Shown: positions 430 to 38,304, numbered from the stretch's first letter. The stretch is 64,000 nt of DNA from Glycera tridactyla (GCA_965644265.1 OZ286461.1:62186001-62250000), one strand, 5' to 3'. Notes: generated by a model from the letters alone, not told the origin. Translations and numbers: made by a program.

Positions 430-627
430 AAGGGCTTCACTCCTCTTCACATTGCTGCTAAATATGGGAACATCAAGGTGGCTCGGCTGCTGCTGCAGAA
501 GCAGGCCGACCCCAACATCCAGGGCAAGAATGGTCTCACTCCTCTGCATGTTGCTACTCACTACAACCACGTCAACGTTGCTCTGCTACTCCTTGAAAAT
601 GGCGCATCACCACACTGCACTGCCAAG
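430..627 (+). CDS. Ank: Ankyrin exon, two ANK repeats (about repeats 17-18 of 24)
   Basis: ttgacag|AAG...AAG|gttggt; 198 nt, phase 0-0; [66 protein letters not shown]. Confidence 0.97.
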
Positions 628-3600: not shown

Positions 3601-6600
3601 TTGATTGAAGTTAGTTGCACTATTCTGTTTTTGGAATGATATCGTGGATGGATGGCTGTTGTATGGATTTTACAATTGCGCCTGTTGTATTTGCAGACCG
3701 GTCAGACTCCACTGTCAATTGCTCAGCGACTTGGCTACATCTCGGTCGTTGAGGTCCTCAAGAACATCACAGAGGTCCAGACTACAGCAACTGATGAGAA
3801 ATACAAGGTCGTTGCTCCTGAGACCATGCAGGACACTCTCATGACAGATTCAGAAGATGAAGGCGGTAAGTTCAAACTTTACTCGAAATGCAAATTATCC
3901 TGTCATCAGTTTTCATTTTGTTATTCCTCTCTTAATTTAGATTTTCTGTTTATCCCTTGGAAATATCCCTGTTCGTATGCAGCACCCAGTATAGAGTTGA
4001 TTGGTTCAACAGTTTCTTTAGTTCGTTTCAAAATGGTTGTAGCTCCTTCAACTACCATTTATTTATTGCTGTGGATATTTGTAGATAGAATCCCGAGAGT
4101 TTCATTTTGTGATTGAGAATTTGTAACTTTCCCAATAGTTTGTGTCCCTTGTCACTTTTGAAGTTACTCAAGCCCTGGTCTCTGTCAATTACTTTTATTT
4201 TGATTGTAAAACCGTCAAGATGAATCTATCCTGCTATTTTGACCCAAGGAAATGCTTTGTTGGATCACAGATGATCTAATATTTGGCAATATGAAACACC
4301 AAATCAGGTGTCTTCTTTATTATATTTGGCAATTGAGCCTTTCATCTCTAAGAGGGATGGAAAAGTCAAATTTTTCTGGGGTATGAACTGATACCCGTAA
4401 GGGTTTCCCATCTGTTGAATGTGATCTTAACCAATGTATACTGGTTAAAACAGGTTTATCACACTCATTTGGCGCCAGTAAGTATGGGGTTGACATGGAA
4501 ACACACATCCTCTACTAATATGTACATACCTCCATCTGTAGTCCGTACATATGTGTATATATATATATCACTTGGGCCGCTGAACCACCCCATCTTTGAT
4601 CCTGCTTTCTCCATGGTTTCACAGTAGTAGTAATTGGTGAGAATATGGCATTGGAAATCTGCTCCTCTCACTCTCTCTTGCATCTTCCTCTGTGATTGGT
4701 GATAGTCACTGCGGAAACTATGCAATTTCTGGTGAGTTTATTGGATTGAATGGAGCAGAAAAGGGGTTCTCAGATTACTAGTCAAAAAGCTGGCTTTCCA
4801 CATGGGATTGTGATTTTGGCGTGTCTGTGTTTTCTTGTGTGTGTGTGTGTGTGATGACTACAGCAACTACCTCACAGCACCAGCGGGGTATTGATGCCCC
4901 CTTGTCACATTGGAGAGGTGCTCGTGCAAGAATACCTACTAGTTGTGATCTCAGCAATTATACCTCCCCTGTGGGAGATGAAATCAGGTATTGCACCTGC
5001 TGAGAGCACAACCAGAGTGCCTTCTTGCATTTATGCCACATATATCATGAACAACATGTCAGAAATATTTGTTGAGGCAGGTAGAATTGAATCATAATCT
5101 CATGTAATGTACCTGGAATCATTGTTTGGCACAAACTGGGCCTCGCGGTATAGTTAGGTCTGCAGCACTGGAAGCTAAAGTAATCATTTGGCACAAAGGG
5201 AGCCTCAATCATGCAGGTAATAGCTGCCTTCTCAATCAACTGGATTAGAATGGATCTCATCGAATCTCCCCTTCTTTGATATCAGTCAAGGTTGGTATTG
5301 CAGAACCACCTGCAGCTGAAAATGGCTCCCATCACAAAGTTCATGCACATGTATCACATAGAAATGTGACAAACCAGTTCACCATTCAGTCTAATCTCTA
5401 TGAATTGTTATTAGGAACATAGAGAATTCATGGGATGCATGGATCTATATGTTGTTCTTATATGTGTGGCATAATCTCTGATTCATCAAAATGCTCGCAC
5501 TTGATCTCTGCACAGGCAAGAGATGTGTGAACTTGTGGCACCATAATAACATACCCACTTCTTACTCCTCATAGTCGCATTTAAGTGGAAGGACATCTAT
5601 TATATAGGGTGGACAGCCAGGATTCAGCATTACTCACTTGTCATGGAATACAGGGAGAATATCTCACATGGTGGTAGGCTCAGAGAATCACGGAAGTCAT
5701 GACTTTTAGCCAAATAAATCACCAGGCCACTCTTGTTTTGCTTTGAAGGATGATATTCACCCTGTATCCCATGGGCATGAATTCTAGCTATGACATCATG
5801 GGGTATATGGCAGCATATCGGATTTGTAGGATGTATTTTATATTCCCCCCCCCCCCCATGTATCTATCACATATTTGAACATGTCACATAATGTATCACT
5901 AGCTTTACAAGGCATATGGACTTTGATCCAGATTAATTTAAGATCATGCCCTATCAGGTTGCTATGGCAACACAGGAACATCAGATATTTCTTGTACATA
6001 AGTCATGATGCCTCCATGTTCATCTCCATCTTGCTGCAAAACTTTCGTATTCATTCATGTGGAATGTAAAGACAATCGGAAATGAATTTGGACTATTGAT
6101 TGTTTTTGAGCCTTGGTGTTCATTCAGTATTATTTTTTATGTTCTCTCATACATTTTAATAGAACAAGTGATGAAAGCACGTCTAGTGCAAAATATACAT
6201 AGATACCGCATGAAAAATGAGAAAAAAACTCTTGTGGAATATCAAGTTGAGATTCTAGTTAATCTTTCATCACCTTTCAGTGTGCTTTTGAGTGATGTGG
6301 CCTGCTAGGCATAATTGAAAACCTCACCCAATGACTTGATTGGTAATCATTCAAATGAAAGTGGGCAGCATGATGACTGGGGAGTAAATATGAAGATGGA
6401 GGAAGTAGCGCTCTAACTGCCCATGTATATCAATATCGTATCCCTCCCAGGATTATGGCTTCATATCCCCTGACTTGCTGTACCCTACTCCTCACGTCTT
6501 GAACCCATTCTGCTGAAAGATAGATGCAATCCGAATTACTATTAATGGGTATATCCAGTTGCTATGTCATTGTGAACAGACCATAGCAACCAAAGGCAGT

Positions 6601-9600
6601 TGCTCCTACATGGGAATGAGTGACCAATATAGTTTCATGAGTTGGTTGCCAGTCTTTCACTGGTATCAACAGATGTGCTTCTTGACGTGAATGTGGCGTT
6701 TTTCATGTGAGAAATTTTGTTTGTGAGCTATGGATTGATCGATACCAGCATGGGGAGAGTGTGTGAAAACTGTAACTAACACCATTCTTCATTGTTCATG
6801 ATTGTAATTGTTGTATTTGAGGTCCGTATTGAATAGTTTCACTGTGGAATATCTAGCAAGCATTGTCATTGATGCATTTGTATATATGTGTCTATTGAAT
6901 AGACAGTACGCGTAATTCTTCCTTCATCAGAACAGGTATAGTAAATAATTAACATGGGTAGTGTGTTTAAGGGTTAAGAAGGGTTAGTTATTGACATCGA
7001 GTTAGGTTAACTCTCGCTGTCCATATCTGTTATTTGTCTGCTTCAGTCCCCTTCTATCCACCGATCAGTGTGTCTCAGTATCGAATTGTATTCAGCTCAC
7101 ACAAATCGATCACAAATGGATGCTCCGACTGTTGGTCAGTGGATAGAAATGGAAATTAGCAGACAGTCAACAGAAATGGGCACTGAAGCAGAGAGTTAAA
7201 TTCAGGCCAGTGCCATGAGATTATGAATCTGGCATATCCTGCTTACCCAAAGTTTTATTTATGAAATTTCGTGTTTTCTTGTTCCTTTGTTTGACTGAGA
7301 ACTTCTGATTCACAAACTGACTATCATTTGGAGAGTTTGCACCATAATATGCGAGACATTGACAGTGTACAGAAGTGACTTAATGATTCCTCCATATTTG
7401 ATTACAAACTTGAATAGAACACAAACAAACATTGATTCTGGATTATCGGTCATTTTGGCAGAGTGAAAGTGTTTTCTAGTCACCGTTACATACTGTATAA
7501 GCAAAGATAGGATCGAAAAGTGGTTGGGGAAATACGCATGTACTTCATGTGTGAATGCTTATGCCGCTGTAATGTTGTGATCAAAGTGGAGTGAGCACAT
7601 GAAGTCGGAAAAGGACACACACAATCATATATGATGTGCCCAAAAAGTACATGCACTTCAGCATTCTTTAATGAGATATGGGCACATACAAATCTGAAAT
7701 GGCACATGGAAACTGTACTGATGTATCCAAAAGACCCATACATATTTCTAAGTCAGAAAGTCCCCGCATTGTCCATCTCTATGTTTCTCAATTTACTGCA
7801 CATTTTGGAATGAGAAAAAAGCAAGATGCTTGGATTTGTCAACTTCTGTGCCAGTGGGTTGGCATGATGAGTTTGTTTGCTCAAACCGATGATGTGAACT
7901 TATCTCTTGAGATGGTGATGCTGATATCCAATGCTGATACAGTTGAACCTGCAATGAGAGACCTCCGATGGGAGACCACTGTTGCAGGGCAACTTTCCGA
8001 CATAGTGAAATATACCCCTAACACGAGACCACCTCTTTTTAGAGACAACATTTTGTTGAGTTTTTGGTTGTCTCTCGTCGCAGGTTTCACTGAATCTGCT
8101 CATAAGACTGTGACCAATATTGATGAGGTTGAATCACTTTTGTACACTATTACTGTCAGCATTTCTATCCAGACTTACTCAGAGATGAATATGATGTCTT
8201 CTCTACTCATTGGTTACGGGTTCTCACTAATCAGATTGTTCACAAGTCGATATATTTCCGTATTCATAATCAGATATGATAGATAACCAAGTTACGAAGG
8301 TATTGGGACATCTCGGTATGAGACAAGTCACTCTGTGATATATTACAATATTGATCCCGGGATCTATTGATTACATACAAGCCTTGAGTTTGCAGTTATT
8401 TTTGATACACCTGTGATATGAAATCACCAATATCTGAATTTAATAATCATGTAACCACTGTCTTGATTGAGGATTAATTCTTATCCACTTGTTACTTATA
8501 CTTGCATTTATAACTCAGTTGAGTTTCGAGTTGATTCTGAATTTGATTTGAGTCTTCCCCAATTATTGTTTTTTTCCAGCAAACCAGCCACATTGTCAAA
8601 ATAATGAGTTATTACCCAATCTCTTGTCAAGTGATTTCTGATGGAGTTATGTATGCCTTCATTCATTTGTGATTCAATACCTGTGCTGAGCAACTTTGGA
8701 CATCCCCTGGCTAGGGGGAATGAGGCTTGGAAAGAAATTTAGTGGGACATTGCCATCATCAAGATTATATAAAAGAATTTGAGCCTATGTTTATTCCTAC
8801 TTATGTTCCTTGTAATAATGAAGTGTTTGTTAGAGCAGTTATCATTTTCATGAATAAACAGAATTTGACCCAATTTTTTCCACATATCTCACATGATTAC
8901 GGATAGGAATTTCCCTCTTAATAACTAATCAAAACATTTTGAACTTTCACCAAATTTGACTCTTGACTCTCAATATAGAATAGAGACTGATGTTGGGTTA
9001 TATATTCCAGTATGTTTTGATGCAGTGTTATTTTTGTAAGATGTGGTATTTAGTTCTACCTTGGGTATTTTTCTACCAGCTGAGGATTTGGTTCCCGCCT
9101 CACCAGCGTTTCTACGGGCAACACCAGACCAGAACATTTACATGCCCTACCGCGAAGCAAGGAAAGATGCACAACAGGAACCGGGTAAACATCCCCGCTG
9201 TCTGTGTCATCGCATGTGTTGCTGTGACAACTAATGTTCCCATGTGACCTCCCAGACCCGTATGACCCCACACACACCAACCCCAAACACCCTTGTATTT
9301 CAGCTGACAAACCCAACGATTTAAGTCAGAGCATATTTTAAGCTTTCCGGATGAATTCTTGCCTATATGTTGATTCATATCTTGGCTCAGGGATGAGGGT
9401 AGATGAGAATATCTTTGTTGAGCTGTGAAATACTGTACTTCCTCTTGCCATTTCACATAATTAGACATACCCCCTGAATTTGCGTCAAATTTTCTGTCTT
9501 ATATTAAATGAATCACTGCATTTTAAAAAGTAAAATGGATCAGGATAGGTCAGCCAAGATCTTAATATCTTGTTTTGGATATGGTATATATTGTCACTAG

Positions 9601-12144
9601 TCCTTGTGTATATCACAGAATGCTTTGCAATTCAGATCCAGCAGTTGGAATAGTATGAGATCACGGAGGTAGCCTGATATTGAAAGTTCAACTGCTTACA
9701 AGAATGGATATTCAAAATTGAATGATATCACAGTGGTCATGTCATGAAGAGTCTCATAAATGACCTGCCCAAATTCATAGATTTGTTTAGCGGAAATTGC
9801 AGTGAAAGATATTCTCACCTTGATCAAGCTGTATCTTCCTTCTCATCTTAAGATCAGGTTTGTGTCCAGTCATTCCATTCTGGGAAAATCAACATCCCAT
9901 GGTGATTGGGTTTGAAACAATTCAATTGATTTCATGTATCACAAAAAGTCTGGGACAGATCCCTCATAGTTCTATATTACATCTTGAGGTGTCTTGAACT
10001 CTGGACCAGCCCTGATGGCGCCCCTTCTCTCTTCTGACCACATGATGATTAAGTGGGAAATTGCTGAGTAATATGTTGAATTAATCATAACGAATTTGAT
10101 CAAGAGGAGGTGGAGGGAGGTCTTTGTCTATGCTATCACCACCTATAAGGCTTTTCGTGTGAATGCGCAGCCATCGGCAAAAAATCCCCTCTGATCATTG
10201 CCACTGGAATGCTGCCTCGTCGCTTTACCAAGCAGAGTGACCGATATGATTCAATAGACTAGGTCAGGGCTCCTTGCTAAAGACTGCCCTGCTCACACAA
10301 GCAAGCAGATTTGTTGTTAGGGCAGGTGATTTTATCTGACTGCCTGTCCGATGGGCAAGTACCTGTCCATGATTATATGCAAGAGGGCAGGTGAAAATGA
10401 CATGGGGCAGGTCGAAACCCCACTATGACTAAATACAGGAGGGCAGGTGAAAATGACAGGGTGGCAGATTGAAATCCCACTCTACCTGCACGAATGGACA
10501 TCCGAAAAAAAAAGTTGATATAGAGTCTTGTAGGTGCCTCCTTATGTGCTCCCTTCCAATAGTCTTCATTCATCTCCATTCAGCCTTCTAAACTTCAGGT
10601 TTGAACAAATGTCCTTTATCTCATGAATTGAGAGATAGACCATTGACAAAGAGTTGTTTTCGAGCATGCATGGTCAGTGAATGTATCTCCTTATGCATGC
10701 AGTGTGCAGTTCTGTGGAGGCTGAAGTCGGAATGAGTATGACATGCTGCCTCAATTCATCTCAAAGCTCTTGCTTTTGTGTCAAAGATGAGGCTTTTGCA
10801 GGTGTGGGACTTCATAGGTATCTCACCTATCTTCACCTACCTTCCAAATTCAACCAACCATTAGACCGATTTGTCATCTACTAGTACATGAAGAAGAGGT
10901 TTTGCATAGCTCTATCTCCACTTAACATTTCTGATGCCCCATCATCTCGTGTTTAGGGTTTGTGAGAGTGACATCTGCAGGAGTATTCAATTCCCATTGC
11001 TGATAAATCAAGAGTCCTGCCTTTATGCGTTATTAAGTACCTGATCATTCTTTCAACATCAAATTTCCAGCCAGAATTAAGATTGGATCCCCTAAATAAT
11101 TTTCACTAAGTTTTCACTAAGTTCCACCAATTTGAGGTACACCAATGCAGTTGTCATGGATGGATATATTGGTTATTGTCATTTTCTCCCTCTTTGTTTG
11201 CCATTGTTATCGTTCACCAAAATATTATTATCATTTTTAATATAACAACTACATTGAGGAGCCCTTCATTTGCAAATGACTCAAGGCTGAAGGTTATTTT
11301 TTTCATCACCTTTCTCCAAGTTCATTGCATCTGATGACATCTTACATACATTACCCCAGGGTGGATACATGCCGTTAAACCTGAAACCAAAAAACCAACT
11401 CCTTTTTGTGTGATGTACATAGTTCTTGTCCCCATCTGCTGTGTGATTGACTCTATCTCTTTGATTATCTTTGAAGTGACTAACATGACAATTTGATCCA
11501 GATTTTACTCATCAACCCATCTGACAACACCACTAAATAATCTCCCCATTTTTTTTTAGAGAGATTCTCATATTGTTACTGTGCCACATTTGGTCTTATT
11601 TTTGAATGGGACAAATGCTCACACATTGCATGATGACTGAATACTCAGGAGGAAGAGTTTGCCAGAGTGCAGGATCTGTAGCCGACCTAGATTTCAGAGG
11701 GATTGCATGGGTTGAGAAGAGTTCGGTAGTTATCCAACTAAACCAACAGACTTGTGTATCAGACATTGCTTGTGCATGTGCATATTCTTGTGCGATGTTG
11801 CAGAGTGCCCATGCATCTGATGCAATTATTACACCTTCTGGGACAGAAGTTCAATGATTCCGATGGCGTCTTCATGGATTGGCTTCTTGAAGTTTTGCAT
11901 CCCTGATGCAAGATTTGTTATCTTCCCATAACAGGGATAGAAAGTTGATTATATGATACCATGTTGATATTCATCTTAGAAATCTGACATAGCGAGTTTG
12001 CATCATTTGATGATGGTGTGTGCCACTAGAGTGTGACCCTGAACTTGTGTGTCAAAAAAGTTTGGTTTTTACAGTAAAACTCGATCTACAGATGACCATT
12101 TTTACCTCGTCTCAACGAAGTTGAGGGGAGGTATTGCGGTCACT

Positions 12145-12182
<38 letters not shown>

Positions 12183-15100
12183 AGCGTCGGCGTCGGCGTC
12201 GGCGTCGGCGTCCTCATCTGCGTTAAGGTCAGCGTTAAGGTCATGTTGAAGTCCCTTTGCTCAGCAACTAGAGGGCCTAGCTCCATATAATTGGGCACAC
12301 ATATACTTCAGTACATTTGCTATTGAATCCAGCCATCATCAAGGTGCCATCTCAATGTTCTGCTTGATTAATTTTGGGTTGAAACTTGTGTTTTCTGAAG
12401 TGATGGGACTCTGTCATTGGGGGCAATGTTGAAGTCATGTTAAAGTCACATTGCTCAGCAACTAGAGTGCCCAGCTCCATGGAATATGACATGCATATAC
12501 TTCAGTACATCTACTGATGAATCCAGCCATCATCAAGGTAGCATCCCAGTGTTCTGCTTGATTAATTCTGGGATGAAAATTGGGTTTTTTGAAGTGATGG
12601 GACTTAGCCATCTATGAGCTATTTCTGATGATCCGATTTATTCATGTTCAGTTTGCAGTTGATTCTCCACGTGTGTCTTTATCCCCTGTGATTGTATATT
12701 GCCCATGAAAGACTGATATGTGCGAGATGGTGATTTTGGGGCAAAAAATCACTTTTTTGAAATGAATGAACTTGGTCATTTCTGTTGAGTTTTTCAGTAC
12801 CCAGCCACCCCAAACTTGATACAGAGGGATCTCATAGCATTCCTTAATGAATGCAAGTCATGGATGAGGTCTCCTAAGAGGCCTGGTTCGTTTTGGGGTG
12901 AATATTGGTTTTCCAGAAATGGATTTTTCTGAAGATGTTGGCCATCCGTAGCCACACCAAACTTGGCATAGATGCAGTTCATAGCATTCCCTAGTGAATG
13001 CGAGCCATAGATGGGGTCTCCCAACAGGCCTGGTCGGTTTTGGGGTGAAAATTGGTTTTTCAGAAATGGATTTTTCTAAAAAAGGAGGCTGTTCATAGCC
13101 ACACCATACTTGTTACAGATGTACTTAATAGCATTCTCTAATGAATGCTAGCCATAGATAGGGTCTCCCATTAGGCCTGGTTGGTTTTGGGGTGAAAGTT
13201 GCTTTTTCAGAAATGGATTTTCCTGAAGATGTTGGCTGTCTGTAGCCTCAGCAAACTTGGCATGGATGTAGTTCATAGCATTCCCTGTTGGATGCTTGCC
13301 ATAGATGGGGTCTCCTAACAGGCCTGGTTGGTTTTGGGGTGAAAATTGCTTTTTCAGAAATGGATTTTTCTAATGAAGGTGGCTGTTCATAGCCACACCA
13401 TACTTGGTACAGATGTACTTGATAGCATTCCCTAATGAATGCTAGCCATTGATGGGGGTCTCCCAACAGGCCTGGTTGGTTTTGGGGTGAAAGTTGCTTT
13501 TTCAGAAATGGATTTTCCTGAAGATGTTGGCTGTCTGTAGCCTCAGCAAACTTGGCATGGATGTAGTTCATAGCATTCCCTAATGGATGCTTGCCATAGA
13601 TGGGGTCTCCCAACAGGCCTGGTTGGTTTTGGGGTGAAAATTGTTTTTTTTCAGAAATGGACTCTTGTAAAGAAGGTGGCTGTTCATAGACAGTCCAAAC
13701 TTGGCATGGATGCGGTTCATAGCATTCCTTGATGACTGCAAGTCATGGATGGGGTCTCCCAATAGGCCTGGTTGGTTTTGGGGTGAAAATTGTTTTTTTC
13801 AGAAATGGATTTTCCTAAAAATGTTGGCTGTCTGTAGCCTCAGCAAACCGGGCATGGATGTAGTTTATAGCATTGTCCAATGAATGCAAGCCATGGATTG
13901 GGTCTCTCAACAGGCCTGGTTGGTTTTTTTGGGAAAAAAAGTTTTTTCAGAAATGGATTTCTCTAAAGATGTTGGCTGTCCATAGCCACACCAGACTTGG
14001 CATAGATGTAGCTCATAGCATTCCCTAATGAATGCTAGCCATAGATGGGGTCTCCCAACAGGCCTGGTTGGTTTTGGGGTGAATTCTTTTTCTTCAGAAA
14101 AGGACTTTTCTAAAGAAGGTGGCTGTTCATAGACAGTCCAAACTTGGCATGGATGCAGTTCATAGCATTCCTTGATGAATGCTAGCCATAGTTGGGGTCT
14201 CCCAACAGGCCTGGTTGGTTTTGGGGTGAAAATTGGTTTTTCAGAAATGGATTTTCCTAAAGATGTTGGCTGTCCGTGGCCACAGCAAACTTGGTACAGA
14301 TGTACTTGATAGCATTCCCTAATGAATGCAAGCCATAGATTGGGTCTCCCAACAGGCCTGGTTGGTTTTGGGGTGAAAATTGTTTTTTTTTTCAGAAATG
14401 GACTTTTCTAAAGAAGGTGGCTGTTCATAGACAGTCCAAACTTGGCATGGATGCAGTTCATAGCATTCCTTGATGAATGCTAGCCATGGATGGGGTCTCC
14501 CAACAAGACTGGTTGGTTTTGGGGTGAAAATTTTGTTTTTCCGAAATGGATTTTTCTAAAGAAGGTGGCTGTTCTTAGCCACTCCATACTTGGTACAGAT
14601 GTACTTATTAGCATTCCCTAATGGATGCCAGCCATAGATGGGGTCTCCCAACAGGACTGGTTGGTTTTGGGGTGAAAATTTTGTTTTTCAGAAATGGATT
14701 TTTCTAAAGAAGGTGGCTGTTCGTAGCCAATCCATACTTGGTACAGATGTACTTATTAGCATTCCCTAATGGATGCTAGCCATAGATGGGGTCTCCCAAC
14801 AGGACTGGTTGGTTTTGGGGTGAAAATTGTTTTTTTCAGAAGTTGATTTCTCTAAAGAAGGTGGCTGTCCGTAGCCACTAGACCATACTTGGTACAGATG
14901 TAGTTCATAGCATTCCCTAATGAATGCAAGCCATAGATGGGGTCTCCCATTAGGCCTGGTTGGTTTTGGGGTGAAAATTGTTTTTTCAGAAATCGATGTC
15001 TCTAAAGAAGGTGGCTGTATTCCCTAATGAATGGTAGCCATGGATGGGGTCTCTCAACAGGCCTGGTTGGTTTTGGGGTGAAAATTGGTTTTTCAGAAAT

Positions 15101-16214
15101 GGATTTTCCTAAAGATGTTGGCTGTCTGTAGCCTCAGCAAACTTGGTATTGATGTACTTGATAGCATTCCCTAACGAATGCTAGCCATATGATAGATGGG
15201 GTCTCCCAACAGGCCTGGTTGGTTTTGGGGTGAAAATTGGTTTTTCAGAAATGGATTTTCCTAAAGATGTTGGCTGTCCGTGGCCACAGCAAACTCGGTA
15301 CAGATGTACTTGATAGCATTCCCTAATGAATGCAAGCCATAGATTGGGTCTCCCAACAGGCCTGGTTGGTTTTGGGGTGAAAATTGTTGTTTTTTTTCAG
15401 AAATGGACTTTTCTAAAGATGTTGGCTTTCCGTAGCCACTCCAAACTTGGTGCAGATTCAATTTATATTATTCCCTAATGAATGCAAGCCAGGGATCAGG
15501 GTTCCTGACAATGCTTATCGACTTTTGGGACAAAAGTAGATATTCAGAAATGGATTTTTCTTCAAGATTGTTGCTGCCCCTAGCCACACACTAAACTTGA
15601 CACTGATGCCTTTCATAGCATTCCTTCACAAATGCCTGCAATGGATAGGGACCGATGACAACCTTGCTTGATCTTGGGGACAAAAATGGTAATGTGAACC
15701 AGACGTGACTTCTGATGAGCATCAGCTAATAGATCCAACCTTTGTTTGAAAATTGATTTCCACAGCATGAGTTGGGTCATCTATGTGTTACATATATTCG
15801 AGGCGTTTGAGTTGGCTTCGTTGAGACGAGGTCCGCCTTCAGTGAAGGCTATGTTTATGAAGATTTAGTAGTATTATCTCCAGTCTGCATTCAATTTCAG
15901 AAATAGGTCTGTGTAGATTTCTGGTCCCTCTTGGGAAAAAAGAAATTGAATCCTCTTGAATATTGCAGGACAAGATGTTTGAATGACATACTGTAATTTG
16001 CATGTGAATTCATTCACACACGACTAGATATGTATCCCCATCGATACGGACTGATCAATTTGAATCTGCCTGAAATTAAGGCTGTAGTCGCAATGTAACA
16101 ATTATAGGCAATACTTCTTCAAACTTGACATTGAGAAGTACCCAAAGGTTAATGTTTCGATGGAAAAGAATTTGTTGGCTTTCTTATATCATTGCTGTTG
16201 TTTGTTCAATTGTT

Positions 16215-16270
<56 letters not shown>

Positions 16271-19200
16271 TGCATGCGTGCGTGCGTGCGTGCGTGCGTG
16301 TGTGCAAACACGAATTTGTGCAGGTGTTAACATGCTCAGATTTCATCATTATTGCCAAGCAGTCTCTAGATTCAAGGTCGTATTCAATGCTTGATCTCAT
16401 CGCCTCGTTGGTGACTCGACATCATCAATAGAGGATAGATCTCATATACATCTCATTCACATCCGTCTCTTTCTCTCTCATTTCTCCAGGTGAAGACACA
16501 ATTCTTGGTGATCAGTCGATGTCGATAGACGACATGAAGTTCCTCGGTGATGACTCCATCACTCCCATCCGGGTACGTAACGCCATATGTGACGTCGTCA
16601 TTTTCGTCATGGTACCCATGACGAAAATTATTGTCTCTTCAATGGACACTAGCATTATTTTCATGATCTTACGATACTTTACTTTTGGTGTTAGATTTTA
16701 ATTTCCTCATTATGTTTCTCCTACTTCTTTTGTTTTCAAGGATATTGAATCAAAACTGACATATTCGATGATTTTCAGACTCGAAGTCATTTCACACTCA
16801 AACCCATCATCATTATTTGGTCCTTTGAAGATTGAAATAAGTATCAATTCAGTGGGTTCTATAAACTACCTGATATTGAACTGATAGCCGAATGTTTTTA
16901 GTTACAAGCTAGTCATCTGTGATGAAATTCCCCAGATTGCTGGAGTATTTACTTTACTTATGTGAATCATTCGAGATTAGTGACTACTGGGAAAAATGTC
17001 AAAATTTTGTTTTCTGCCAGTTGTAATTTGCCCCACTGGTCTTGTGATGTTTTCGTAAGCAAAATTCAAGACAGTTCATTGATATATTTGAATTGTTGTG
17101 AAAAAAAGAACTTTCATTTTGAAAGTAGTGCATAAAAGTGATACAATCAAATTCAAACAAAAATGTTCTGGTCCTTTTGATTCTTTGTGCATTTTTCAGT
17201 CGGCACAAATATTGGGCAATTGGTGTCAGGTTATTCTGTTTCAGTCCTTTTATCCATATCAAAATCACATCAAATTAGAGATATCTCCACATCCAAATTC
17301 TGTTGAAAAGAATCTTATTTTTATGTAATCGATTTTTTCGGTACATTTATTTCATTTCACAAGTTGTGGTGTTGTGAAACTGGTTTTGAGTATCCATATA
17401 CATGTATGTGGTGTGTGAATATGTCGCACTACTTTGGCCTATTGATGTTGTGATGCTTCTTGTATATTTGTGTTGTCAGTGGTTTGTAGCAGTGTTATTT
17501 TACGTATCTAGGACGAATTCTTGACCATGGATCGATTCAGTACAGCGACATCCATGTCAGGATACATGCAGGAAGACATTCAGTACCTGCACTCTGACGG
17601 TGACATGAATGCACCTGTCTTCGACACACTGCCCGGTGAAGCATCCCCGGCAGTCCGCTTGAGACATGGGAGAAATTACGACAGTCTGTCACCTCAGGCC
17701 CGACTGGCTTCACATGAGCGATTACCATCACAAGATCGCTCCTACTATTCTACAGATCCACGTGAATTGTCGCTGGACCGTGACTCAGCTCGCTACTCCA
17801 GGGACAGCGAGAAGTTGTTGAATGACTATGGTAGCTTAACACGGGAACGAGATCCTACCCGCATACATGATCGAAATGTATCACGAGACTCGCGTGATTC
17901 TCGCGATCTCTCAAATGGGCCATATCGCGATACATCAAGAGATTCCAGAGACCTCTCGAGGGATTCCCGGGACATATCACGAGACACATCAGGAGACCGT
18001 GACTACTCACGGGATCGGGATCGACAACCATCCAGAGATAGGGACCGGCGAAGACGACGGCACCGTTATCCATCACACGATCGCTACTCATCTGGTGATC
18101 GTCGTCCCCGATCCCGGTCACATTCAGCGGACCGATACTCACTGCCATACTTTGATAAGGTAAACCTCCTTCAACCTGGTAACATAACCAGCAGCGACTG
18201 CATCCTCTAACATGCTTTCACCGACTACCACCAGGAGGCGTGCTGTGAACTCGGAATTGCGCATGTTCTCCGCCATCATTACTAATGATAAGTTGGGATG
18301 ACAACGAAAGCAGTCTCAGCATGAGAAATAAATGTCTTGTGTGATGCATGTTGTGTCATTTTTCTTTTGTTTGAGATTGCTTCAGTTGTGGTGTTAGATA
18401 GATTATGGTATTCAAGTTACTAGTTTGAATGAAGCTGACCGTGCACTTCCCTGATACCAAATACAAATTCTCGGATGAATTTATGTATCAAGTGAGTGAG
18501 ATGCATAAGATAAAGCCATTGGTTCAAATGACCCATTGTTGATTGGTGATTACTCAGAACCATGCAGTACTTTTCATATTTTCAAACAGTTCCATAAAAT
18601 CGATATACAGTAGAAACTCTAATTTCAAAGATGCCGGCAATATGATTTTGGAGTAATCATCACTATTTTTTGGCTAAAATTACTCCGAGAAATTCTCACT
18701 CTTCTAATTTGACCATTGCAATGATTGTCAACATTACTATGTTTGCTATCTTTTATTATCGGCAATGGAATAGCCATAGTAAGCGCAGTCACCGGCAGCT
18801 TCATGGTATATATAGAAGTGTTTAGATGGACACACCTCATGCTACGGAGCAAACAAAATTATCACACAAAACAGGTGTTGAAAATATTGCGTTCATATTC
18901 CAGGATATTGAGCTTGTTTGAAATCTGGAACATACTGAGAAACTTTCCATCATCTAGACACAGTTGATGTATTGAATCTGTCCAAATTTTGCTCAGAAGA
19001 TTAACTCAGAATGAATATATAGTAATCCTTCAGATTATGCTTCTATTTCTCTGTCAGTGATTCAGGAACTTCAACATTCACAAGTTCATCATCTAATAGT
19101 GTTGATTTGGGATGTGTCCATCCAGGCATTTCATCAGAATAGTTGATATATTTGATGTAAGTGTTCGCATAGCGGCATACAGAAAGAGAGTCTTTGAAGC

Positions 19201-22200
19201 GTTTTCTCGGCAGGAGATCCTCCTTTTCAAACACCAGTTTTCATGATTTTGCAATCAGGCAAAGATTTGGCATTTCACTCATGGCGTGAGTGAAAATTTT
19301 CACGGAAAATGTAATAGTTGTTCCATATTATTCATTGTTCTTTGAATCCAGTACTAATTTAAGTCATTACCTTTCTGATAATTCTGAAATATAAATCAAA
19401 GGCTCTCTACCTAGTAACATGACTTCCTTTTTCAGCAAAACAAGAAAATGAACCATGTAATACCATTTCTACGCCTTAACAGCTGTATGTACCTGAAAGA
19501 TACCAACACATTCACTAAGGAGTTTGCATATGTACATCATTGTATCTCAAACATTTTAGTGTGTTTATGGGCAACCTTGAACCAAACTAACATTGCATGG
19601 GATCCCTTTTTTAGTTTCAATTGGTATTACCATCTCCTATAGAGGAGTCTTATTTCAACTCACATTTGACTCATCCATTTGTTAACCCTACTCACCTGGC
19701 ATTCACAACTAATCTTGATGGAAGTGTGGGCCTTGACTGCTTTATCCATCAGCAGAATAATATGCTTTTCATTTCTCAGCAGCTGGTTGCATTTCCATTG
19801 AATTTGGCTGCCATGTTTGTAAAGGTTTTCAAAGTATTAAGAATAATTTCTTATTCTGAATTACATCTTGCCATATATATTCTAGCTTGTAAATTAAATA
19901 TACAGAATGCAAAAGTAAGAACCCATCTCCATTCAATAGCTAGAGGTCTCGGCTTTTAGTTTTTGATGCAACATTCAGATATTGTTGAAGTGAAAAAAAC
20001 AACATATTCACTGTATAAGAACTTGAAAGATTGTATAACAAGCTTATGTAGTGTAGGTCATATGACACATGAACATAATGAAAGGGAAAGAGAAGTATAA
20101 ATAAACATTATGAGACAAAAAAGCCTGAAACAACTGTAAGACTCAAATACGAATGGCAGGGTGACATGTTTGCAAGACATATGGTAGTAGATGATAAGAA
20201 AGGTACGTATCAGCTAGAAATAGTTTTGGAAAAGTAATCACAAAAACAATTACTAGGACATAGGAGAAAAAATGCTTAGTCAGATGACCAAGTGTTGGGT
20301 AACTTGTATGAGTTGTGAGCTAGAAATAGCAATTCAGTCATTGGGATTCAATTGGGAATAACAAATTCATTTCATTTGGGGAGGGGGGGGGGGGGGGGGC
20401 TGACTATCGAGTCATTGAGTAACTGATTGATATTGCTGTTTTTGAAAACAGGAAATGTGCATCATACTCGACCTACTGTTCGAAATGATTGTAATCGGAA
20501 GTGTTGGAAAAGATAAGAGATAAGATACATGTCTGGCTTAGATATTAGGTCTGTTGACACATCTATCAGTAGTAAAAGTATTCGATACTCAGTGGTTGTT
20601 GAGATGCTTGCGTTTTATGACGGATATTATGCTTATTCAAGATTCAAATATTCTCAGGCATGTGGGATTTTTACAATGAAATGGTAGGTGTCTCCATTAA
20701 GTAAGGAGGAATTGGAATATAGTTTGCATGAATATGGACCGCTTAAAAAACTAATACTTTTTTATTATAACCAATATTACCACCATGAATATTTCTTGAC
20801 GAAATCAATTTACAGATTTGTGATTGATAGACCATGGCTTTGTTGAATTTTTTGTTGATATGATTCATTGGTCTGTTTGTGCATGTTTGATTTAGATCAC
20901 AGACCATGTGTGAAAGCTTTTGAATCAAATTGATGAGTTGATGTGAATTTGTGGGTGAGATTAGTTTTGGCAGTTGGTGTCATTATTTGATCCACACTCC
21001 TTAATTGAGGTTGATAACAATATAAGCTCAGAATCCTCAACTGTAAGATTTCATTCCTTTTCAGTGTCAATGGGGCCTCTTGGAAGCCATACACTGGTTA
21101 TCTGCTAGATTATGCCACCCTCCCATTGAACAGTCACAACATGACTTATCTCGATGCTTTCAATCAGCTCTAAGGAAGATAAATAGGATTGCAACAAGAA
21201 ATTTCAACTGTAATCTGTACCACATTGGCTAGATATTATAGATATTATGTATTATTTGTGTCTGGAAAGCAGTGTTCAGAAAGCAAAACTTTGCAGTGTT
21301 ATCAACTTGATCTTGGACCGCATTGTATAACTGAATTGGAAGGTACTCAAGGTTCGGTCTGGTGAAATCACTTTGCCAAAACTACTGTGTAAGGATATGC
21401 AATGTATAAACTTGGCTCCATCTTATATCAATTTGTGAGCTGGATTTCATCAGAAAATCATTTTAAGTCAGTGCTATAGTCAATGCTGCATTGTATAGCT
21501 AAATTGGAAGGTGCTCAAGATTTGGTCTAGTGAAATTGCTTTGCCAAAACTACTCTATTATGGCATAGAACATATCAGTGCTTAATAACATATAGGAGGA
21601 AGTCTTGAAGAGACATGAGCTCATGGATGCTTTTTATGATTTTATCATTTCAGGAGGAAAAGTTAGAAGCAACCGTTGGTGGCGGAATGCTGATGGCTGG
21701 CAAAGCGCCTTCGTCCATGGACGAGTCACGTGGTAACATCTACGGCTCGTACAGTGGCGCCTCATTCGCCAGCAGTTTCGATCCCGACAATATTGCATTG
21801 GATAGACATCCAATCTACTCTGGGTAGGTTATATCTAAATCTAGCCGAATACATGTACGGTAGTTTCCGTGATGAGAGTCTGTTGTTTTCCAAGATGGAG
21901 TCTGCTCTGCATTCACATTCGATCAACAGAGTAATTGGAGTTCATCAGTTTCGATCACTCCCATGTTTACAGGACCCATGAATGAATAGATCAGATCTTT
22001 ATCAACCCACATATTGGGGCTGCTGTGGAAGTCCTCAAGATTGAAGGTGAAGTGAAATCATTGATGCCAATTTTCCAAGGATTTTCGGAGTTTCAAAAAT
22101 TGAATGGAAATTAGAATTGAACAATTTCTACTAGTTGGTGGGAAGTTTCAGAACATATCCATTTGAGAATATGCGGACTTTTTCCCCAGAAAATTTGATC

Positions 22201-25200: not shown

Positions 25201-28200
25201 CCCTGGTGTACAGCAAACTACAGTGGAAGAGGTAACCACAAAAAGCAGTGTAATACTCGTCCATGCAGATTGTCGTTACTTCGTGTTGTTACATTCAGTG
25301 TTTTCATTCTGCTTCCACCTACTCGCTATAGCATACTTCCACGTCACATCATCTCTTCTCGCAGATGGTGTCCAGTATTTCACACTTTTCCCTTTTTTCT
25401 TTCTATCTGTACACATTTACATTATCGGTTCCAGTCATGAAAAGGCTTCGGTTTTTCATAGGGAGTAATTTATGCTTTGGTTATTTCTAGGGAGTAAATT
25501 TTTGATTTCTGATAATTTGTTTGGCCCATCATGAACAGTTTATTTGCTAATGTATGACTGATAGCTGTCTGTTTCAGGTACATCCATGCCAATAAGAATT
25601 TTGCCAAATGATTTTGAATCTTGATTGCTATGTCTCATAGCTGGCAAAATAGCGTGCATTTTGTTGGATCCAGTTTGGAGGCAGATTTGACTGCACCTGT
25701 GCCAACAATATTTGATCAGTTTCTCAGACTGTATCAAATTATGCACTGAAATTGGATGAAAACATTGATTTCCTTTGGATTCATTGTCATTTGGCTGAAC
25801 AGGTGTGGTGTGCCGCTACTTGTATGTTATGTTGGATGTATGTGATGAACAACATGTCCTAACAATTGCATCATTAAGTTTGACTTTTTGATTTATTTCC
25901 TCATTCTACAGAAGGTATAGTATTAAATGGTGTTCTTTTCAACATACTCAGTGTGGGATTAAGATAGTTATGGGGCTAGTTTAATTTTTCGGCCAGCTAT
26001 CTGTAGATAACGGTCACAAGAGATGTACCTATCTGAGTAGAAACTGTCTTTTTACCTTGTATCACACCATCTGGGATGGATTTGACCAAATTATTGTGTA
26101 TTTAAGATGCTGCATTCCCTCAAAAAACTGTGCTGGATTGTGACTGCTCAACTGTTCTAAATTTGGAATCTGAAGAATTACCAGATTTTCATCATTAAAT
26201 GCATCAAATCATAGTTGCATGAAATGGTTATCATTCCATGATATTCAGTTCCTTGGAAGGCATATAGAACCATCAGTCTTCACTGACTGATTTCAGTCGT
26301 TCAAAATGCTGCAGTCCCTGAAAGTAGGTTCTACTCAGAAAGGCATTAGATGTAACAGCTATACGAATAATCACTCATGGTCTCAGGGTGAACGACTTCA
26401 ATATTCGCTTATCATTCTATTAATGGCCATAATGACAATGTTATAAAAAAGCCATCTTATTGGTGGACAGCTAGCCAATCAGGCTAGCCAATCAGTCAAG
26501 TCACTCTCTCCCACCAGGTGGTGGTGTTCAATGTGGAATGTGACATCTGGTGTCAATTTAGTGAAACACCCTGTAAATTCCTGCTTGGCATGGAAGAGTC
26601 GTTTTGGGGCGTACTGAAGTCGAGCCTTGAGATCAGGGATCTCTGATGGGAAATAACCAACACCCTCTGATTTTGATTTCATTCTCACCTGAACTGTCTG
26701 ATTTCTGTACAGTGATTTTTGAGGCACATGTGTTGTATGTTATGAAGAAAAAAATCAGTGACTTCTTGATGGTCAACCACTGGTCAATACATACTAATGA
26801 GGCATGAAAAAAACATAGCACAGTTATCAAGAGATAATCTGACAAGTTTATGATGATTTTTTATGATAATCAGGTGATCAATACAGAAATCGTAATTGCA
26901 TTATGAATCATATGCATACTCCTTTTTTGATTTGTCGAAAATTTGTTATTTTCCATTGCACTCATGCAAGCAGATTGATTTAGATCCAGCTAATTGAAAT
27001 GATGCTTCTGGCTTTTTTATTGTCAAGAGTCAAAATTGATATTAACCAGTGGTTTGATCCTGATTCTACACTTCTATGATTTGCACCCAATCTGATCTGT
27101 TGGGGGCCGGTGAATCTGGTTTCTGTTGTATTTGTCTGGTGTCTCTTCTCTGTAAATGCTTCAACCTCCTACTATATATATATAAATGTGTGCAAGTACT
27201 GTACATGTCTTGTTGATTTATATGTAATCGGTACTATGTGTATGATGGTGTTGGTGTAATACAGTCAGAGTGTGGGTCTATATTAGCGATCTGTGCTTGT
27301 GTTTGGGCCAGTTGTCAGCCCAATGTTATGGCAGTAGTCCGTATGATTTTGCTGTCAGATGCATCCAATTTTATGTTCAGCATTCTGGATTTTATTTTCA
27401 ATTCAGTTTGGTCACTTCAGCCCTACATACTTGTGACTTCAAAGCTGTTGCCACTATTCCAGTAAGCCTGGCTCTGGTTCTGGTAGCATATGAAAATTTA
27501 TGTGAAGATTCATGTATGAATCTGTCCTCAGACATTTCTAGACGCCACAGGTGACGAAAGTTCTGTTGCATTGAAAAATTTCCAAGCTTTTTTTTTTGCA
27601 AAACTTTCAGAAAGCCATTCAGGTTTCTCCATCAGCTCAGTCAGTACTGTGCAGATGCTCTATTGTGTGACCCCTAAGTGAAAAGAGGATTACATGACCA
27701 CAGAACAGTTTCCTGTTCAAGTTTGCTGTCCGAAGTCTCACCAATTTTCTGTGGTAGATCATAGAGCCTAAAAGCTGATCAGCCATGATCAAAATCAATG
27801 GAATCACAGGTCATGATGATGGGTAGATGTGTACTGAATGGGCTAAACCACATCACTTGTGTGCTATATTTGGTTGATGCTCTTAGATAATGTTCCCATC
27901 ATTGTACCATACTAAGAGTGTCAGTACTTTTTGAGTACATACTTATATCACGGCCATGATCTCACTATTCGTTGCCCATATGTGGCCACATGATGGTCAA
28001 TTGATGCGGAAGCAACCTCAGACTGGAGTAGAGAATCCAACATTTTTTATACATTTCATTTATGAGCAAGTTAGGTGCATCGTACATGATGTATTTCCCC
28101 CTATAGTATACAGTTGAATCCTGCTACCGTCATTTTAGGTTGGAACCAAATGTAGCAGTTTTGCTTCTTTTTTATTTTCCTTCAGTTGCCCAGGTTGATA

Positions 28201-37200: not shown

Positions 37201-38030
37201 TCTTTCGATCTGCATCATTCCCACTCGAGTAATTATCATTTGGCCATTGAACAAGTCCTCTAGTGTCATCGACAGTTCAGTATGATTTTTTCCCTGAGAA
37301 ATTTACCAAAGTGGTTATCCATCAATTTCCCACCCTAATACTGTTTCTGTTGCAACATAGTTTTGTTGAAAACATGATTGAAATTCGCCATGAATTAGGT
37401 GTGCTTGTTCCCGTCTTTCCATAATGAACTTTGGTGGTGGGCAGTAATTTATATTGGTCAGAGGACTACACTAGTTGCTTTGAAACATTCTAGATGGCGC
37501 TTCCTGGCTGGCTTCAGATTGTGTCAGTAGATGGCGCTGTCCAGATGGCTTTTTATGTCTCCCCCCCTGATGGGGGAGACATATAGAATTCGTATTGTCC
37601 GTCTGTCCGTCTGTCCGTCTGTCCGTCCGTCCGTCTGTCCGTCTGTCCGTCTGTCCGTCTGTCCGTCTGTCTGTCACAAAACCTTGTGAGCACGATTGCA
37701 GAAAAACTACTCATCCGAATTGGATGAAATTTGGCGGGCATATCCCTTGGGAGGGTCCAATGAACTGATTAGATTTTGGTCCATGTGACATAATTTTCAA
37801 GATCACCAGAGGCCCAAATTTCACCAAAATTTCACCAAAGAGGTACCAACTTAATTAAATTCAGTCTCTATTGTGACCTTCCCGAAATGAACTACTTCTG
37901 TTGCCTCTCCATTAATGGTTATGTAAGATTCTTCCGGTCATACAATGCTCCTTTGTCATGCTTCAATGACTTCTCGTTGGTTTCATCTTGCCTCTCTCCT
38001 CAAACAAAAGCCCAAACTTAATTAACTTCC

Positions 38031-38118
<88 letters not shown>

Positions 38119-38246
38119 ACACATGTGTGTGCTCCTTGTTGCTACCTGTGAATATCCAATGGCTATTACTAGTATACTTGGCATATTGGTATATAACTTC
38201 TGTTAGCAATTTGACAGTCATACCCCCCCCCCGGTATTGGTTCACT

Positions 38247-38304
<58 letters not shown>

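What the first reader, a model, noticed from the sequence alone, without database searches (positions are those of the whole stretch)
17512..18159. Ankyrin with a 216-aa exon carrying an Arg/Asp/Ser mixed-charge (RD/RS-like) domain
Seen: a phase 0-0 exon between the ANK repeats and ZU5 whose second half reads [11 protein letters not shown]...[67 protein letters not shown]. The synonymous codons vary, suggesting old, protein-level selected repeats. Established: alternating Arg/Asp(Glu) and RS tracts characterise U1-70K, NELF-E and SR-related proteins, promote condensates and nuclear-speckle targeting, and are SRPK/CLK substrates. Vertebrate ankyrin linkers are much shorter and I know of no such tract in them. 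Inference: a skippable module that could confer condensate formation, phospho-regulated self-association or nuclear import (R5 cluster) on a membrane-skeleton adaptor.
Basis: partly seen in the sequence, partly recalled or inferred. Interest (0 to 1): 0.7.

Follow-up and report, generated by a model that had tools for sequence, protein, structure and literature searches.

The report
Ankyrin linker exon with Arg/Asp/Ser tract
This is a real, evolutionarily conserved coding exon in the floppy linker of a worm's ankyrin (membrane-skeleton adaptor) gene, but its eye-catching Arg/Asp/Ser tract is a species-lineage-specific low-complexity expansion that fails the tested definitions of RS or mixed-charge domains, and whether the exon is ever skipped could not be tested.

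Summary
Window 17512-18159 (+) is an open 216-codon AG...GT-bounded exon, the longest open frame in the window. It lies between the ANK-repeat exons and ZU5 of a canonical ankyrin gene, and its second half is the quoted SRD/RD-rich tract.

The exon is genuine. Two other species carry an orthologous exon with the same splice boundaries and phase (133 and 149 codons). In one it lies downstream of the same conserved linker exon. Only the exons align between species, and dN/dS is about 0.2 in the N-terminal block.

The RD/S tract (aa 123-205) has no counterpart in either orthologue. They carry [DE]-R-x-x-S type repeats instead. The tract fails the published mixed-charge-domain criterion unless every Ser is counted as phosphorylated. 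RS/SR dipeptides are no commoner than composition predicts. AlphaFold2 predicts disorder throughout.

Skipping would keep the frame, because the flanking exons end and start in phase 0. A UG-rich tract upstream of the acceptor in all three species hints at regulated splicing.

Best reading: a lineage-restricted, disordered, probably phospho-regulated extension of the ankyrin membrane-binding/spectrin-binding linker. Condensate or nuclear roles are unsupported. Interest is modest.

The parts
3697..3865 (+). Last ANK-repeat exon. It includes the segment that in vertebrates folds back on the repeats (AI-c-like, ending in the acidic ...DSEDEG). It ends in phase 1 at GGCG|GTAAGT.
   Evidence: The translation aligns over its full length to Ankyrin-1/2 chains 4rlv, 1n11, 5y4f and 7tw3.
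16490..16572 (+). Conserved 83-nt linker exon (phase 1 to 0; ...[15 protein letters not shown]). It is needed to join the ANK exon in frame to the exon under study.
   Evidence: Found by a phase-aware scan. Splice sites are tttctccAG| and |GTACGT. Its orthologue in L001/L002 is 24/28 aa and 84% nt identical.
17409..17508 (+). UG-rich intronic tract just upstream of the acceptor (G+T 0.72, 18 TGT/GTG triplets).
   Evidence: top ~1% of 100-nt windows in this window. The same enrichment is seen upstream of the orthologous acceptor in L001, L002 and L003, although these introns do not align.
17512..18159 (+). The exon: 648 nt, 216 codons, phase 0-0, acceptor AG at 17510-11, donor GTAAAC at 18160-65.
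   Evidence: Orthologous exons with the same boundaries are L001 9986-10384 and L003 138-584.
17512..17739 (+). Conserved N-terminal block (aa 1-76): [19 protein letters not shown], then G..SPA, then LAS.ERL.S.
   Evidence: Three-species alignment A3. Identity to the orthologues is 46-50%. Over 91 codons dN is 0.44 and dS about 2.
17878..18126 (+). Window-specific Arg/Asp/Ser tract (aa 123-205), including the R5 cluster at 18046-18060.
   Evidence: It has no counterpart in L001 or L003. AF2 pLDDT here is 41-48.
18127..18159 (+). Conserved exon end (...[10 protein letters not shown]), with the PY[FY] motif and the donor shared by all three species.
21654..21823 (+). Next linker exon (phase 0 to 2; [10 protein letters not shown]...DRHPIYSG). 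It joins the first ZU5 exon at 29857.
   Evidence: ZU5 by Pfam, E 4e-22.

Best explanation
Window 17512-18159 is a genuine coding exon of a canonical ankyrin gene. The genome is probably an annelid's, according to other agents' notes. The exon lies in the intrinsically disordered linker between the 24-ANK-repeat membrane-binding domain and the ZU5-ZU5-UPA spectrin-binding module.

It has three parts. The first is a conserved, acidic-aromatic N-terminal block of about 76 residues. The second is a fast-evolving low-complexity tail whose shared theme across species is repeated [DE]-R-x-x-S/T, the minimal consensus of basophilic kinases. The third is a short conserved end. In the window's lineage the tail has been remodelled and lengthened into an SRD/RD-rich, net-positive tract.

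Shown: the exon, its conservation and the predicted disorder. Inferred: it works as a length- and charge-tunable, multi-site-phosphorylatable extension of the linker. In vertebrate ankyrin-B/G this linker folds back on the ANK-repeat groove and autoinhibits membrane-partner binding. Inclusion would then change how tightly the membrane-binding and spectrin-binding halves are coupled or autoinhibited. The conserved N-terminal block is the likely interaction segment, and the RD/S tract is a spacer or charge switch. Whether it is a cassette exon or constitutive is open.
For: - Gene context: ANK, ZU5, UPA and Death domains by Pfam. A coherent in-frame exon chain runs 3865 > 16490-16572 > 17512-18159 > 21654-21823 > 29857, with canonical sites throughout.
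- Orthologues: phmmer against 1.84e9 representatives gave P0001, and a word search with P0001 gave P0002.
- Their loci show exons of 399 and 447 nt with the same AG|GACGA(A/G)TT start and AG|GTAAA(C/T)CT end. In L001/L002 the exon lies 3.8 kb downstream of the orthologous small linker exon.
- Only the two exons align between the window and L001, and the alignment starts at the acceptor.
- dN is 0.44 against dS of about 2. The two haplotypes L001/L002 differ at 4 of 399 exon sites, all synonymous, against about 5% in the flanks.
- The exon has GC 0.52 and CpG o/e 1.10, against 0.35 and 0.38 in the flanking introns. This includes 22 CGN Arg codons kept open in a CpG-depleting background.
- AF2 gives mean pLDDT 47, with no residue at or above 70.
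- R-x-x-S/T is enriched over composition shuffles in all three tails: P 0.0008, 0.012 and 0.002.
- The vertebrate linker's autoinhibitory role is described in PMC3663501 and PMC5779224.
Against:
- No detectable sequence similarity to vertebrate linkers or to any solved chain.
- The resemblance of the conserved [IF]-Q-Y-L-[HQ] to the AnkB AI-b contacts Met884, Tyr886 and Arg888 is partial. The Arg position is not kept, and the match is partly recalled from memory.
- The R-x-x-S/T enrichment was found post hoc among eight motifs tried.
- The RD tract's absence from both orthologues means its specific function, if it has one, is not conserved. It could be tolerated low-complexity drift.
- The ANK repeats 10-13 that bind AI-b lie outside the window, so co-conservation of the binding groove could not be checked.
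Confidence: 0.55

Rival explanations
1. The RD/S tract is a functional arginine-rich mixed-charge or RS-like domain. It would give ankyrin condensate formation, SRPK/CLK-regulated self-association or nuclear/speckle targeting, with the R5 cluster acting as a nuclear localisation signal.
For: The tract is R/D/S-rich, at 28 R, 19 D and 19 S in 96 residues, and ordered. It contains RDRDR twice and an RRRRR cluster. If all Ser are counted as negative, the 60-residue window reaches a charged fraction of 0.77 and a ratio of 1.09, which meets the phospho-inclusive criterion of 10.1101/771592.
Against: Unphosphorylated it fails that criterion, at 0.58 and 0.59. RS/SR dipeptides are not enriched over composition (P 0.39), there are no long RS runs, and SP/TP sites are absent. 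The tract is missing from both orthologous exons. The host is a membrane-skeleton adaptor with no RNA-binding module. Nothing was tested on localisation.
Confidence: 0.1
2. A constitutive linker exon with neutral low-complexity expansion. The exon is always included. The conserved N-terminal block carries whatever function exists, and the RD/S tract is replication-slippage-derived filler tolerated in a disordered linker.
For: The acceptor and donor are as good as those of the neighbouring constitutive exons. The tail differs in length and sequence in all three species, at 216, 133 and 149 codons. Vertebrate linker segments AI-b and AI-c are retained in all documented isoforms (PMC5779224).
Against: There is no DNA-level repeat signature of recent slippage. 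Twenty-two CpG-containing Arg codons, eight of them CGA (one transition from TGA), are kept in a gene whose introns are CpG-depleted, which argues for some constraint. The ordered SRD and R-x-x-S spacing exceeds composition. The UG-rich tract upstream of the acceptor in three species hints at regulation.
Confidence: 0.3
3. Not an ankyrin exon. It would be a chance open frame, or part of an independent nested gene or transcript in the ankyrin intron.
For: There are no RNA data. No annotated protein in the searched collections contains it; only ORF calls on raw assemblies do.
Against: The AG/GT boundaries, the phase and the position after the small ankyrin linker exon are conserved in independent species. 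Exon lengths are multiples of three in all three. dN/dS is about 0.2. The frame opens exactly at the acceptor and has no conserved start codon.
Confidence: 0.05

Closest known systems
Vertebrate ankyrin-B/G linker between the ANK repeats and ZU5 (autoinhibitory segments AI-c and AI-b; the 'single divergent exon' of He, Tseng & Bennett 2013, PMC3663501; Chen et al. 2017, PMC5779224)
   Same: The position in the protein is the same. Both are intrinsically disordered and Ser/Arg/Asp-containing, and both diverge quickly between paralogues or lineages while staying conserved within them. The upstream AI-c-like segment and the ...LGDDS... block are conserved here.
   Different: HMMER detects no similarity to the vertebrate linker. 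The exon structure differs, because here the ...LGDDS... block is a separate 83-nt exon. The insert is 216 residues against a whole vertebrate linker of 138. The AI-b contact pattern is matched only partly.
Arginine-rich mixed-charge domains (U1-70K, NELF-E RD region, synthetic RD repeats; Greig et al., 10.1101/771592)
   Same: Both have alternating Arg and Asp, a net positive charge, disorder and interspersed Ser.
   Different: The tract fails the charged-fraction and charge-ratio thresholds unless all Ser are phosphorylated. RD alternation is short, with a maximum of RDRDR. The host is a cytoplasmic membrane adaptor, and the tract is not conserved in orthologues.
RS domains of SR and SR-related proteins
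   Same: Both have Ser and Arg as leading residues and many SR dipeptides (12).
   Different: RS/SR content peaks at 36% of a 50-residue window and is no more than composition predicts. The register is S-R-D, not R-S-R-S. There is no RRM.
Inserted giant or low-complexity exons of ankyrins (480-kDa AnkG, 440-kDa AnkB, Drosophila Ank2-L/XL, unc-44; Jegla et al. 2016, PMC5135030)
   Same: Both are lineage-variable, frame-symmetric exons that add non-globular sequence to a conserved ankyrin core.
   Different: Those exons sit after the UPA or death-domain region, not in the ANK-ZU5 linker, and they are kilobases long.

Membership tests
Canonical ankyrin (ANK1/2/3, Ank2, UNC-44 type) | ANK-repeat solenoid followed by ZU5-ZU5-UPA and a death domain in one gene, same strand and order | tested here: met
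   Pfam finds Ank (E 7e-24), ZU5 (4e-22 and 2e-3), UPA_2 (3e-22, 8e-27) and Death (3e-10) on + strand ORFs in that order. The last repeat exon aligns to Ankyrin-1/2 structures. Only the C-terminal repeats are in the window.
Arginine-rich mixed-charge domain (Greig et al.) | A 60-residue window with charged fraction >=0.7 and a positive:negative ratio of 1:0.7-1.3 | tested here: not met
   The best window (aa 143-202) has a charged fraction of 0.58 and a negative/positive ratio of 0.59. The values are 0.77 and 1.09 only if every Ser is counted as negative.
RS domain (SR / SR-related proteins) | A stretch of about 50 or more residues dominated (>40%) by consecutive RS/SR dipeptides (threshold recalled from the Manley & Krainer nomenclature, not re-read here) | tested here: not met
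   Maximum RS/SR coverage is 36% of 50 residues. The only alternating run is RSRS. The count equals the composition expectation, 15 against 13.7.
Ankyrin-B type AI-b autoinhibitory segment | A short extended peptide after the ...LGDDS... block with hydrophobic-x-Tyr-x-Arg contacts (Met884, Tyr886, Arg888) to ANK repeats 10-13 | tested here: inconclusive
   A conserved [IF]-Q-Y-L-[HQ] lies 23 residues into the exon in all three species, but the Arg position is H/H/Q. There is no HMMER similarity. Repeats 10-13 are outside the window, and binding is not testable here.
Alternative cassette exon | Length a multiple of three, with flanking exons in matching phase, so that skipping keeps the frame | tested here: met
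   The exon is 648 nt. Exon 16490-16572 ends in phase 0 and exon 21654 starts in phase 0. The orthologues are 399 and 447 nt.
Alternative cassette exon | Both inclusion and skipping junctions seen in RNA | not testable with these tools
The only hint is the UG-rich tract upstream of the acceptor in three species.

The most novel reading that the evidence does not exclude
The exon is a regulated cassette, controlled through the conserved UG-rich tract upstream of its acceptor. It would switch an annelid ankyrin between a short, vertebrate-length linker and a long one. The long linker would carry its own ANK-groove-binding (AI-b-like) segment plus a tract that becomes a true mixed-charge, self-associating domain only when multiply phosphorylated. 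That would be a splice-plus-kinase switch for ankyrin autoinhibition or clustering at membrane domains.
Probability: 0.12. Interest if true: 0.6.

Novelty: new variant of a known kind. Interest (0 to 1): 0.3.

Why it matters
In vertebrates the ANK-ZU5 linker decides whether ankyrin-B or ankyrin-G reaches the plasma membrane, by autoinhibiting the repeat groove. How this control evolved outside vertebrates is essentially unknown.

This exon is a conserved, lineage-restricted addition that more than doubles the linker, from about 120 to about 335 residues, and carries dense R-x-x-S sites. It is a natural entry point for asking whether invertebrate ankyrins use the linker in the same way, and whether splicing or phosphorylation tunes it.

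The finding also shows that a striking RD/RS look in one species can be a local elaboration of a different ancestral repeat. On present evidence it is an ordinary disordered-linker variant and does not point to a new mechanism.

Tried and rejected
- Word-index protein searches with the whole exon and with its residues 1-100 found nothing. The length filter also excludes full-length ankyrins.
Exons were searched one by one.
- A JGI metagenome scan with the two-species alignment gave 247 pattern matches, none confirmed.
- PDB sequence searches with the exon, its first 34 residues, the small linker exon and the next linker exon gave no meaningful match.
- Pfam finds no family for the exon.
- Supplement S2 of PMC5135030 (invertebrate ankyrin sequences) is stored truncated and holds none of the motifs.
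- Walking 5 kb further downstream in the second species did not reach the next linker exon.
- An in-frame internal donor before the tract was considered. Only a weak AAT|GTATCA at 17878 exists, matching 3 of 6 consensus positions.
- A direct splice from 3865 to 17512 was considered and rejected, because the phases do not match.
- CK2 (S-x-x-D/E) and proline-directed (SP/TP) motifs are depleted or absent.
- Fold search was not run, because the model is low-confidence throughout.

Full report
**Observation**

The frame opens at the acceptor...tatcTAG, where the TAG at 17509-11 is both an in-frame stop and the AG. It is followed by a good donor, AAG|GTAAAC. At 232 codons stop to stop it is the longest open frame on either strand of the 64-kb window. 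The chance of 216 open codons at this base composition is about 1e-6.

The second half is strongly ordered. SRD occurs 10 times against 1.1 expected from shuffles of the same residues (0 of 20000 shuffles reach it), and RD occurs 14 times against 5.6. At the DNA level there is no array, only a 12-bp x2.2 match. Third-codon-position identity at a 9-nt offset is 0.19, and all six Arg codons are used.

**Gene context and model**

Pfam scans of + strand ORFs give ANK repeats (478-3800), ZU5 (29.8 kb and 34.7 kb), UPA (46.5-47.7 kb) and a Death domain (48.5 kb). This is a canonical ankyrin. The last repeat exon, 3697-3865, aligns over its full length to solved Ankyrin-1/2 chains, including the fold-back segment that follows repeat 24. 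It ends in phase 1.

This exon cannot be joined directly to 17512 because the phases do not match. A phase-aware scan found the missing piece, an 83-nt exon at 16490-16572 with strong sites. It encodes ...[15 protein letters not shown] and ends in phase 0. The next exon, 21654-21823, starts in phase 0 and ends in phase 2. It joins the first ZU5 exon at 29857, with the 18-nt microexon noted by another finding (25214-25231) fitting the same phase.

The exon under study is therefore phase 0-0, and skipping it would keep the frame. Without it the linker is about 120 residues. With it the linker is about 335, against 138 for vertebrate ankyrin-B residues 828-965. Each exon was searched by reference on its own.

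**Is it a real exon?**

The case therefore rests on comparison.

- phmmer of the exon against 1.84 billion cluster representatives returned one relative, P0001 (E 3e-9). It is an ORF call on two roughly 95%-identical contigs of an ENA assembly (L001/L002, probably two haplotypes).
- A word search with P0001 found a third species, P0002, on a 1-kb Logan contig (L003).
- In both cases the ORF calls read through the donor into the intron, so these are genomic or unspliced sequences.
- The orthologous exons are L001 9986-10384 (399 nt) and L003 138-584 (447 nt). Both start AG|GACGA(A/G)TT (Asp-Glu-Phe) and end ...AG|GTAAA(C/T)CT. Both are multiples of three.
- In L001/L002 the exon lies 3.8 kb downstream of the orthologue of the small linker exon, which is 24/28 residues and 84% nt identical.
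- Between the window and L001 only these two exons align, and the alignment begins at the acceptor dinucleotide.
- Over the 91 confidently aligned N-terminal codons, dN is 0.44 and dS about 2, which is saturated.
- The two haplotypes differ at 4 of 399 exon positions, all synonymous, against about 5% in the flanks.
- Within the window the exon has GC 0.52 and CpG o/e 1.10, against 0.35 and 0.38 in the flanking introns.

I take the exon as genuine, with about 0.9 confidence.

**Anatomy**

The three-species alignment (A3) shows three parts.

- A conserved N-terminal block of about 76 residues: [19 protein letters not shown], then G..SPA, then LAS.ERL.S.
- A variable low-complexity tail.
- A conserved end with PY[FY] before the donor.

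The window's RD/S tract (aa 123-205; 17878-18126) has no counterpart in the other two species. Their tails are shorter and built of [DE]R[LFY]PS and DRSY units: 6 and 5 matches to [DE]R[LFYS].[ST], against 0.2 in shuffles. The C-terminal end of the window's tract (...[14 protein letters not shown]...) still looks like those units.

A post hoc motif screen (eight motifs, three species) found one shared order. R-x-x-S/T is enriched over composition in all three tails: 16 against 8.0 (P 0.0008), 6 against 2.4 (P 0.012) and 8 against 3.2 (P 0.002). RS/SR dipeptides are not enriched (P 0.39-0.94). S-x-x-D/E is depleted or at expectation in the three tails, and SP/TP sites are absent.

AlphaFold2 with the two-sequence alignment gives mean pLDDT 47, no residue at or above 70 and two tiny helices, which amounts to predicted disorder. 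Pfam and PDB sequence searches find nothing for the exon.

Greig et al. define natural mixed-charge domains as a 60-residue window with charged fraction >=0.7 and a positive:negative ratio of 1:0.7-1.3. They also offer a variant that counts phospho-Ser as negative (10.1101/771592). Here the best window reaches 0.58 and 0.59, so the criterion is not met. If every Ser is counted as negative the values become 0.77 and 1.09.

RS/SR coverage peaks at 36% of 50 residues, with a single RSRS run. The tract therefore resembles these domains in flavour, but it is not a member by the features I could test. Its absence from both orthologues argues against an old, conserved RD function.

The R5 cluster (18046-18060) could be read as a nuclear signal. 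In a membrane adaptor it could equally be read as a polybasic lipid-binding patch. Nothing here tests either reading.

**Mechanism (inference)**

The vertebrate counterpart of this region is functionally important. A divergent linker exon keeps ankyrin-B off the plasma membrane (PMC3663501). Two disordered linker segments, AI-c (828-852) and AI-b (865-896; contacts Met884, Tyr886, Arg888), bind the ANK-repeat groove. These segments carry known phosphosites (PMC5779224).

In the window's gene the AI-c-like segment and the ...LGDDS... block are conserved, and the exon follows directly. Its most conserved motif, [IF]-Q-Y-L-[HQ], partly echoes the hydrophobic-x-Tyr-x-Arg contacts of AI-b. The basic position is not kept, however, and part of the comparison rests on my memory of the vertebrate sequence, so this is a lead only.

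My best reading has overall confidence 0.55. The exon is a lineage-restricted extension of the autoinhibitory and coupling linker. The N-terminal block is the interaction segment. The tail is a spacer whose charge (net +10 unphosphorylated for aa 121-216) can be reversed by multi-site phosphorylation at R-x-x-S sites.

**Alternative or constitutive?**

This is undecided. The splice sites are as good as those of the neighbouring exons. The only in-frame internal donor before the tract is weak: AAT|GTATCA at 17878, exactly at the tract's start.

One hint of regulation exists. The 100 nt upstream of the acceptor are unusually UG-rich in all three species, although these introns do not align. G+T is 0.70-0.73 and there are 14-21 TGT/GTG triplets, against a window background of 0.53+-0.07 and 4.6+-4.8, which is the top 1-2%. 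UG-rich elements upstream of a 3' splice site are typical binding sites of CELF- and TDP-43-type regulators (established knowledge, not tested here).

**Novelty and limits**

Among 1.84 billion representatives and the 90%-cluster collection, the only relatives are unnamed ORF calls on raw assemblies. No annotated ankyrin with this exon surfaced. This absence is weak evidence for three reasons.

- The word search cannot see proteins longer than 1.75 times the query.
- Isoforms may be hidden behind cluster representatives.
- A disordered exon at under 35% identity would escape phmmer.

The taxon (annelid) is taken from other agents' notes on this genome and was not tested here. Earlier notes of the scan cover the same gene's giant exon beyond the window (s1-307303, s1-307316) but not this exon.

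**Verdict**

The exon is real and conserved. It is a new variant of a known kind, the disordered ankyrin linker. The RD/RS interpretation is mostly unsupported. Interest is 0.3.

Noticed in passing
window 16490-16572 (+): An 83-nt conserved linker exon (phase 1 to 0, ...[15 protein letters not shown]) is required to keep the ankyrin frame between 3865 and 17512. It is 84% nt identical to its orthologue in L001/L002.
   Followed up: yes
window 17409-17508; L001 9883-9982; L003 35-134: A UG-rich tract upstream of the exon's acceptor is present in all three species, although the introns do not align. It is a possible CELF/TDP-43-type splicing control element.
   Followed up: partly
window 17512-18159 versus 16600-17500 and 18200-21600: There is a sharp CpG contrast, with exon CpG o/e 1.10 and flanking introns 0.38. 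This suggests a CpG-depleting (methylated gene body) background in which the CGN Arg codons are maintained.
   Followed up: partly
window 17878: A weak in-frame GT (AAT|GTATCA) lies exactly at the start of the RD/S tract. If used, it would give a 122-codon exon without the tract.
   Followed up: no
window 16190-16330 and 37990-38440: Long (GT)n/(CA)n microsatellites lie in ankyrin introns. They show up as CVCVCV and THTHTH ORFs in the ORF list.
   Followed up: no
L001 versus L002 (ENA ERZ26052378, contigs of 294 and 412 kb): An assembly filed as a metagenome holds long animal contigs in two versions about 5% apart. These are probably two haplotypes of a highly heterozygous invertebrate.
   Followed up: partly
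window 61864-62190 (+): An open frame with an acidic and Ser-rich peptide (...[16 protein letters not shown]...SPEERGS) lies downstream of the death domain. It may be a regulatory-domain exon of the same ankyrin, and it has no Pfam match.
   Followed up: no
window 25214-25231 (+): The 18-nt microexon of another finding (s1-340510) has canonical sites (gtacAG|...|GTAACC) and fits the phase 2 to 2 slot between 21823 and 29857.
   Followed up: partly
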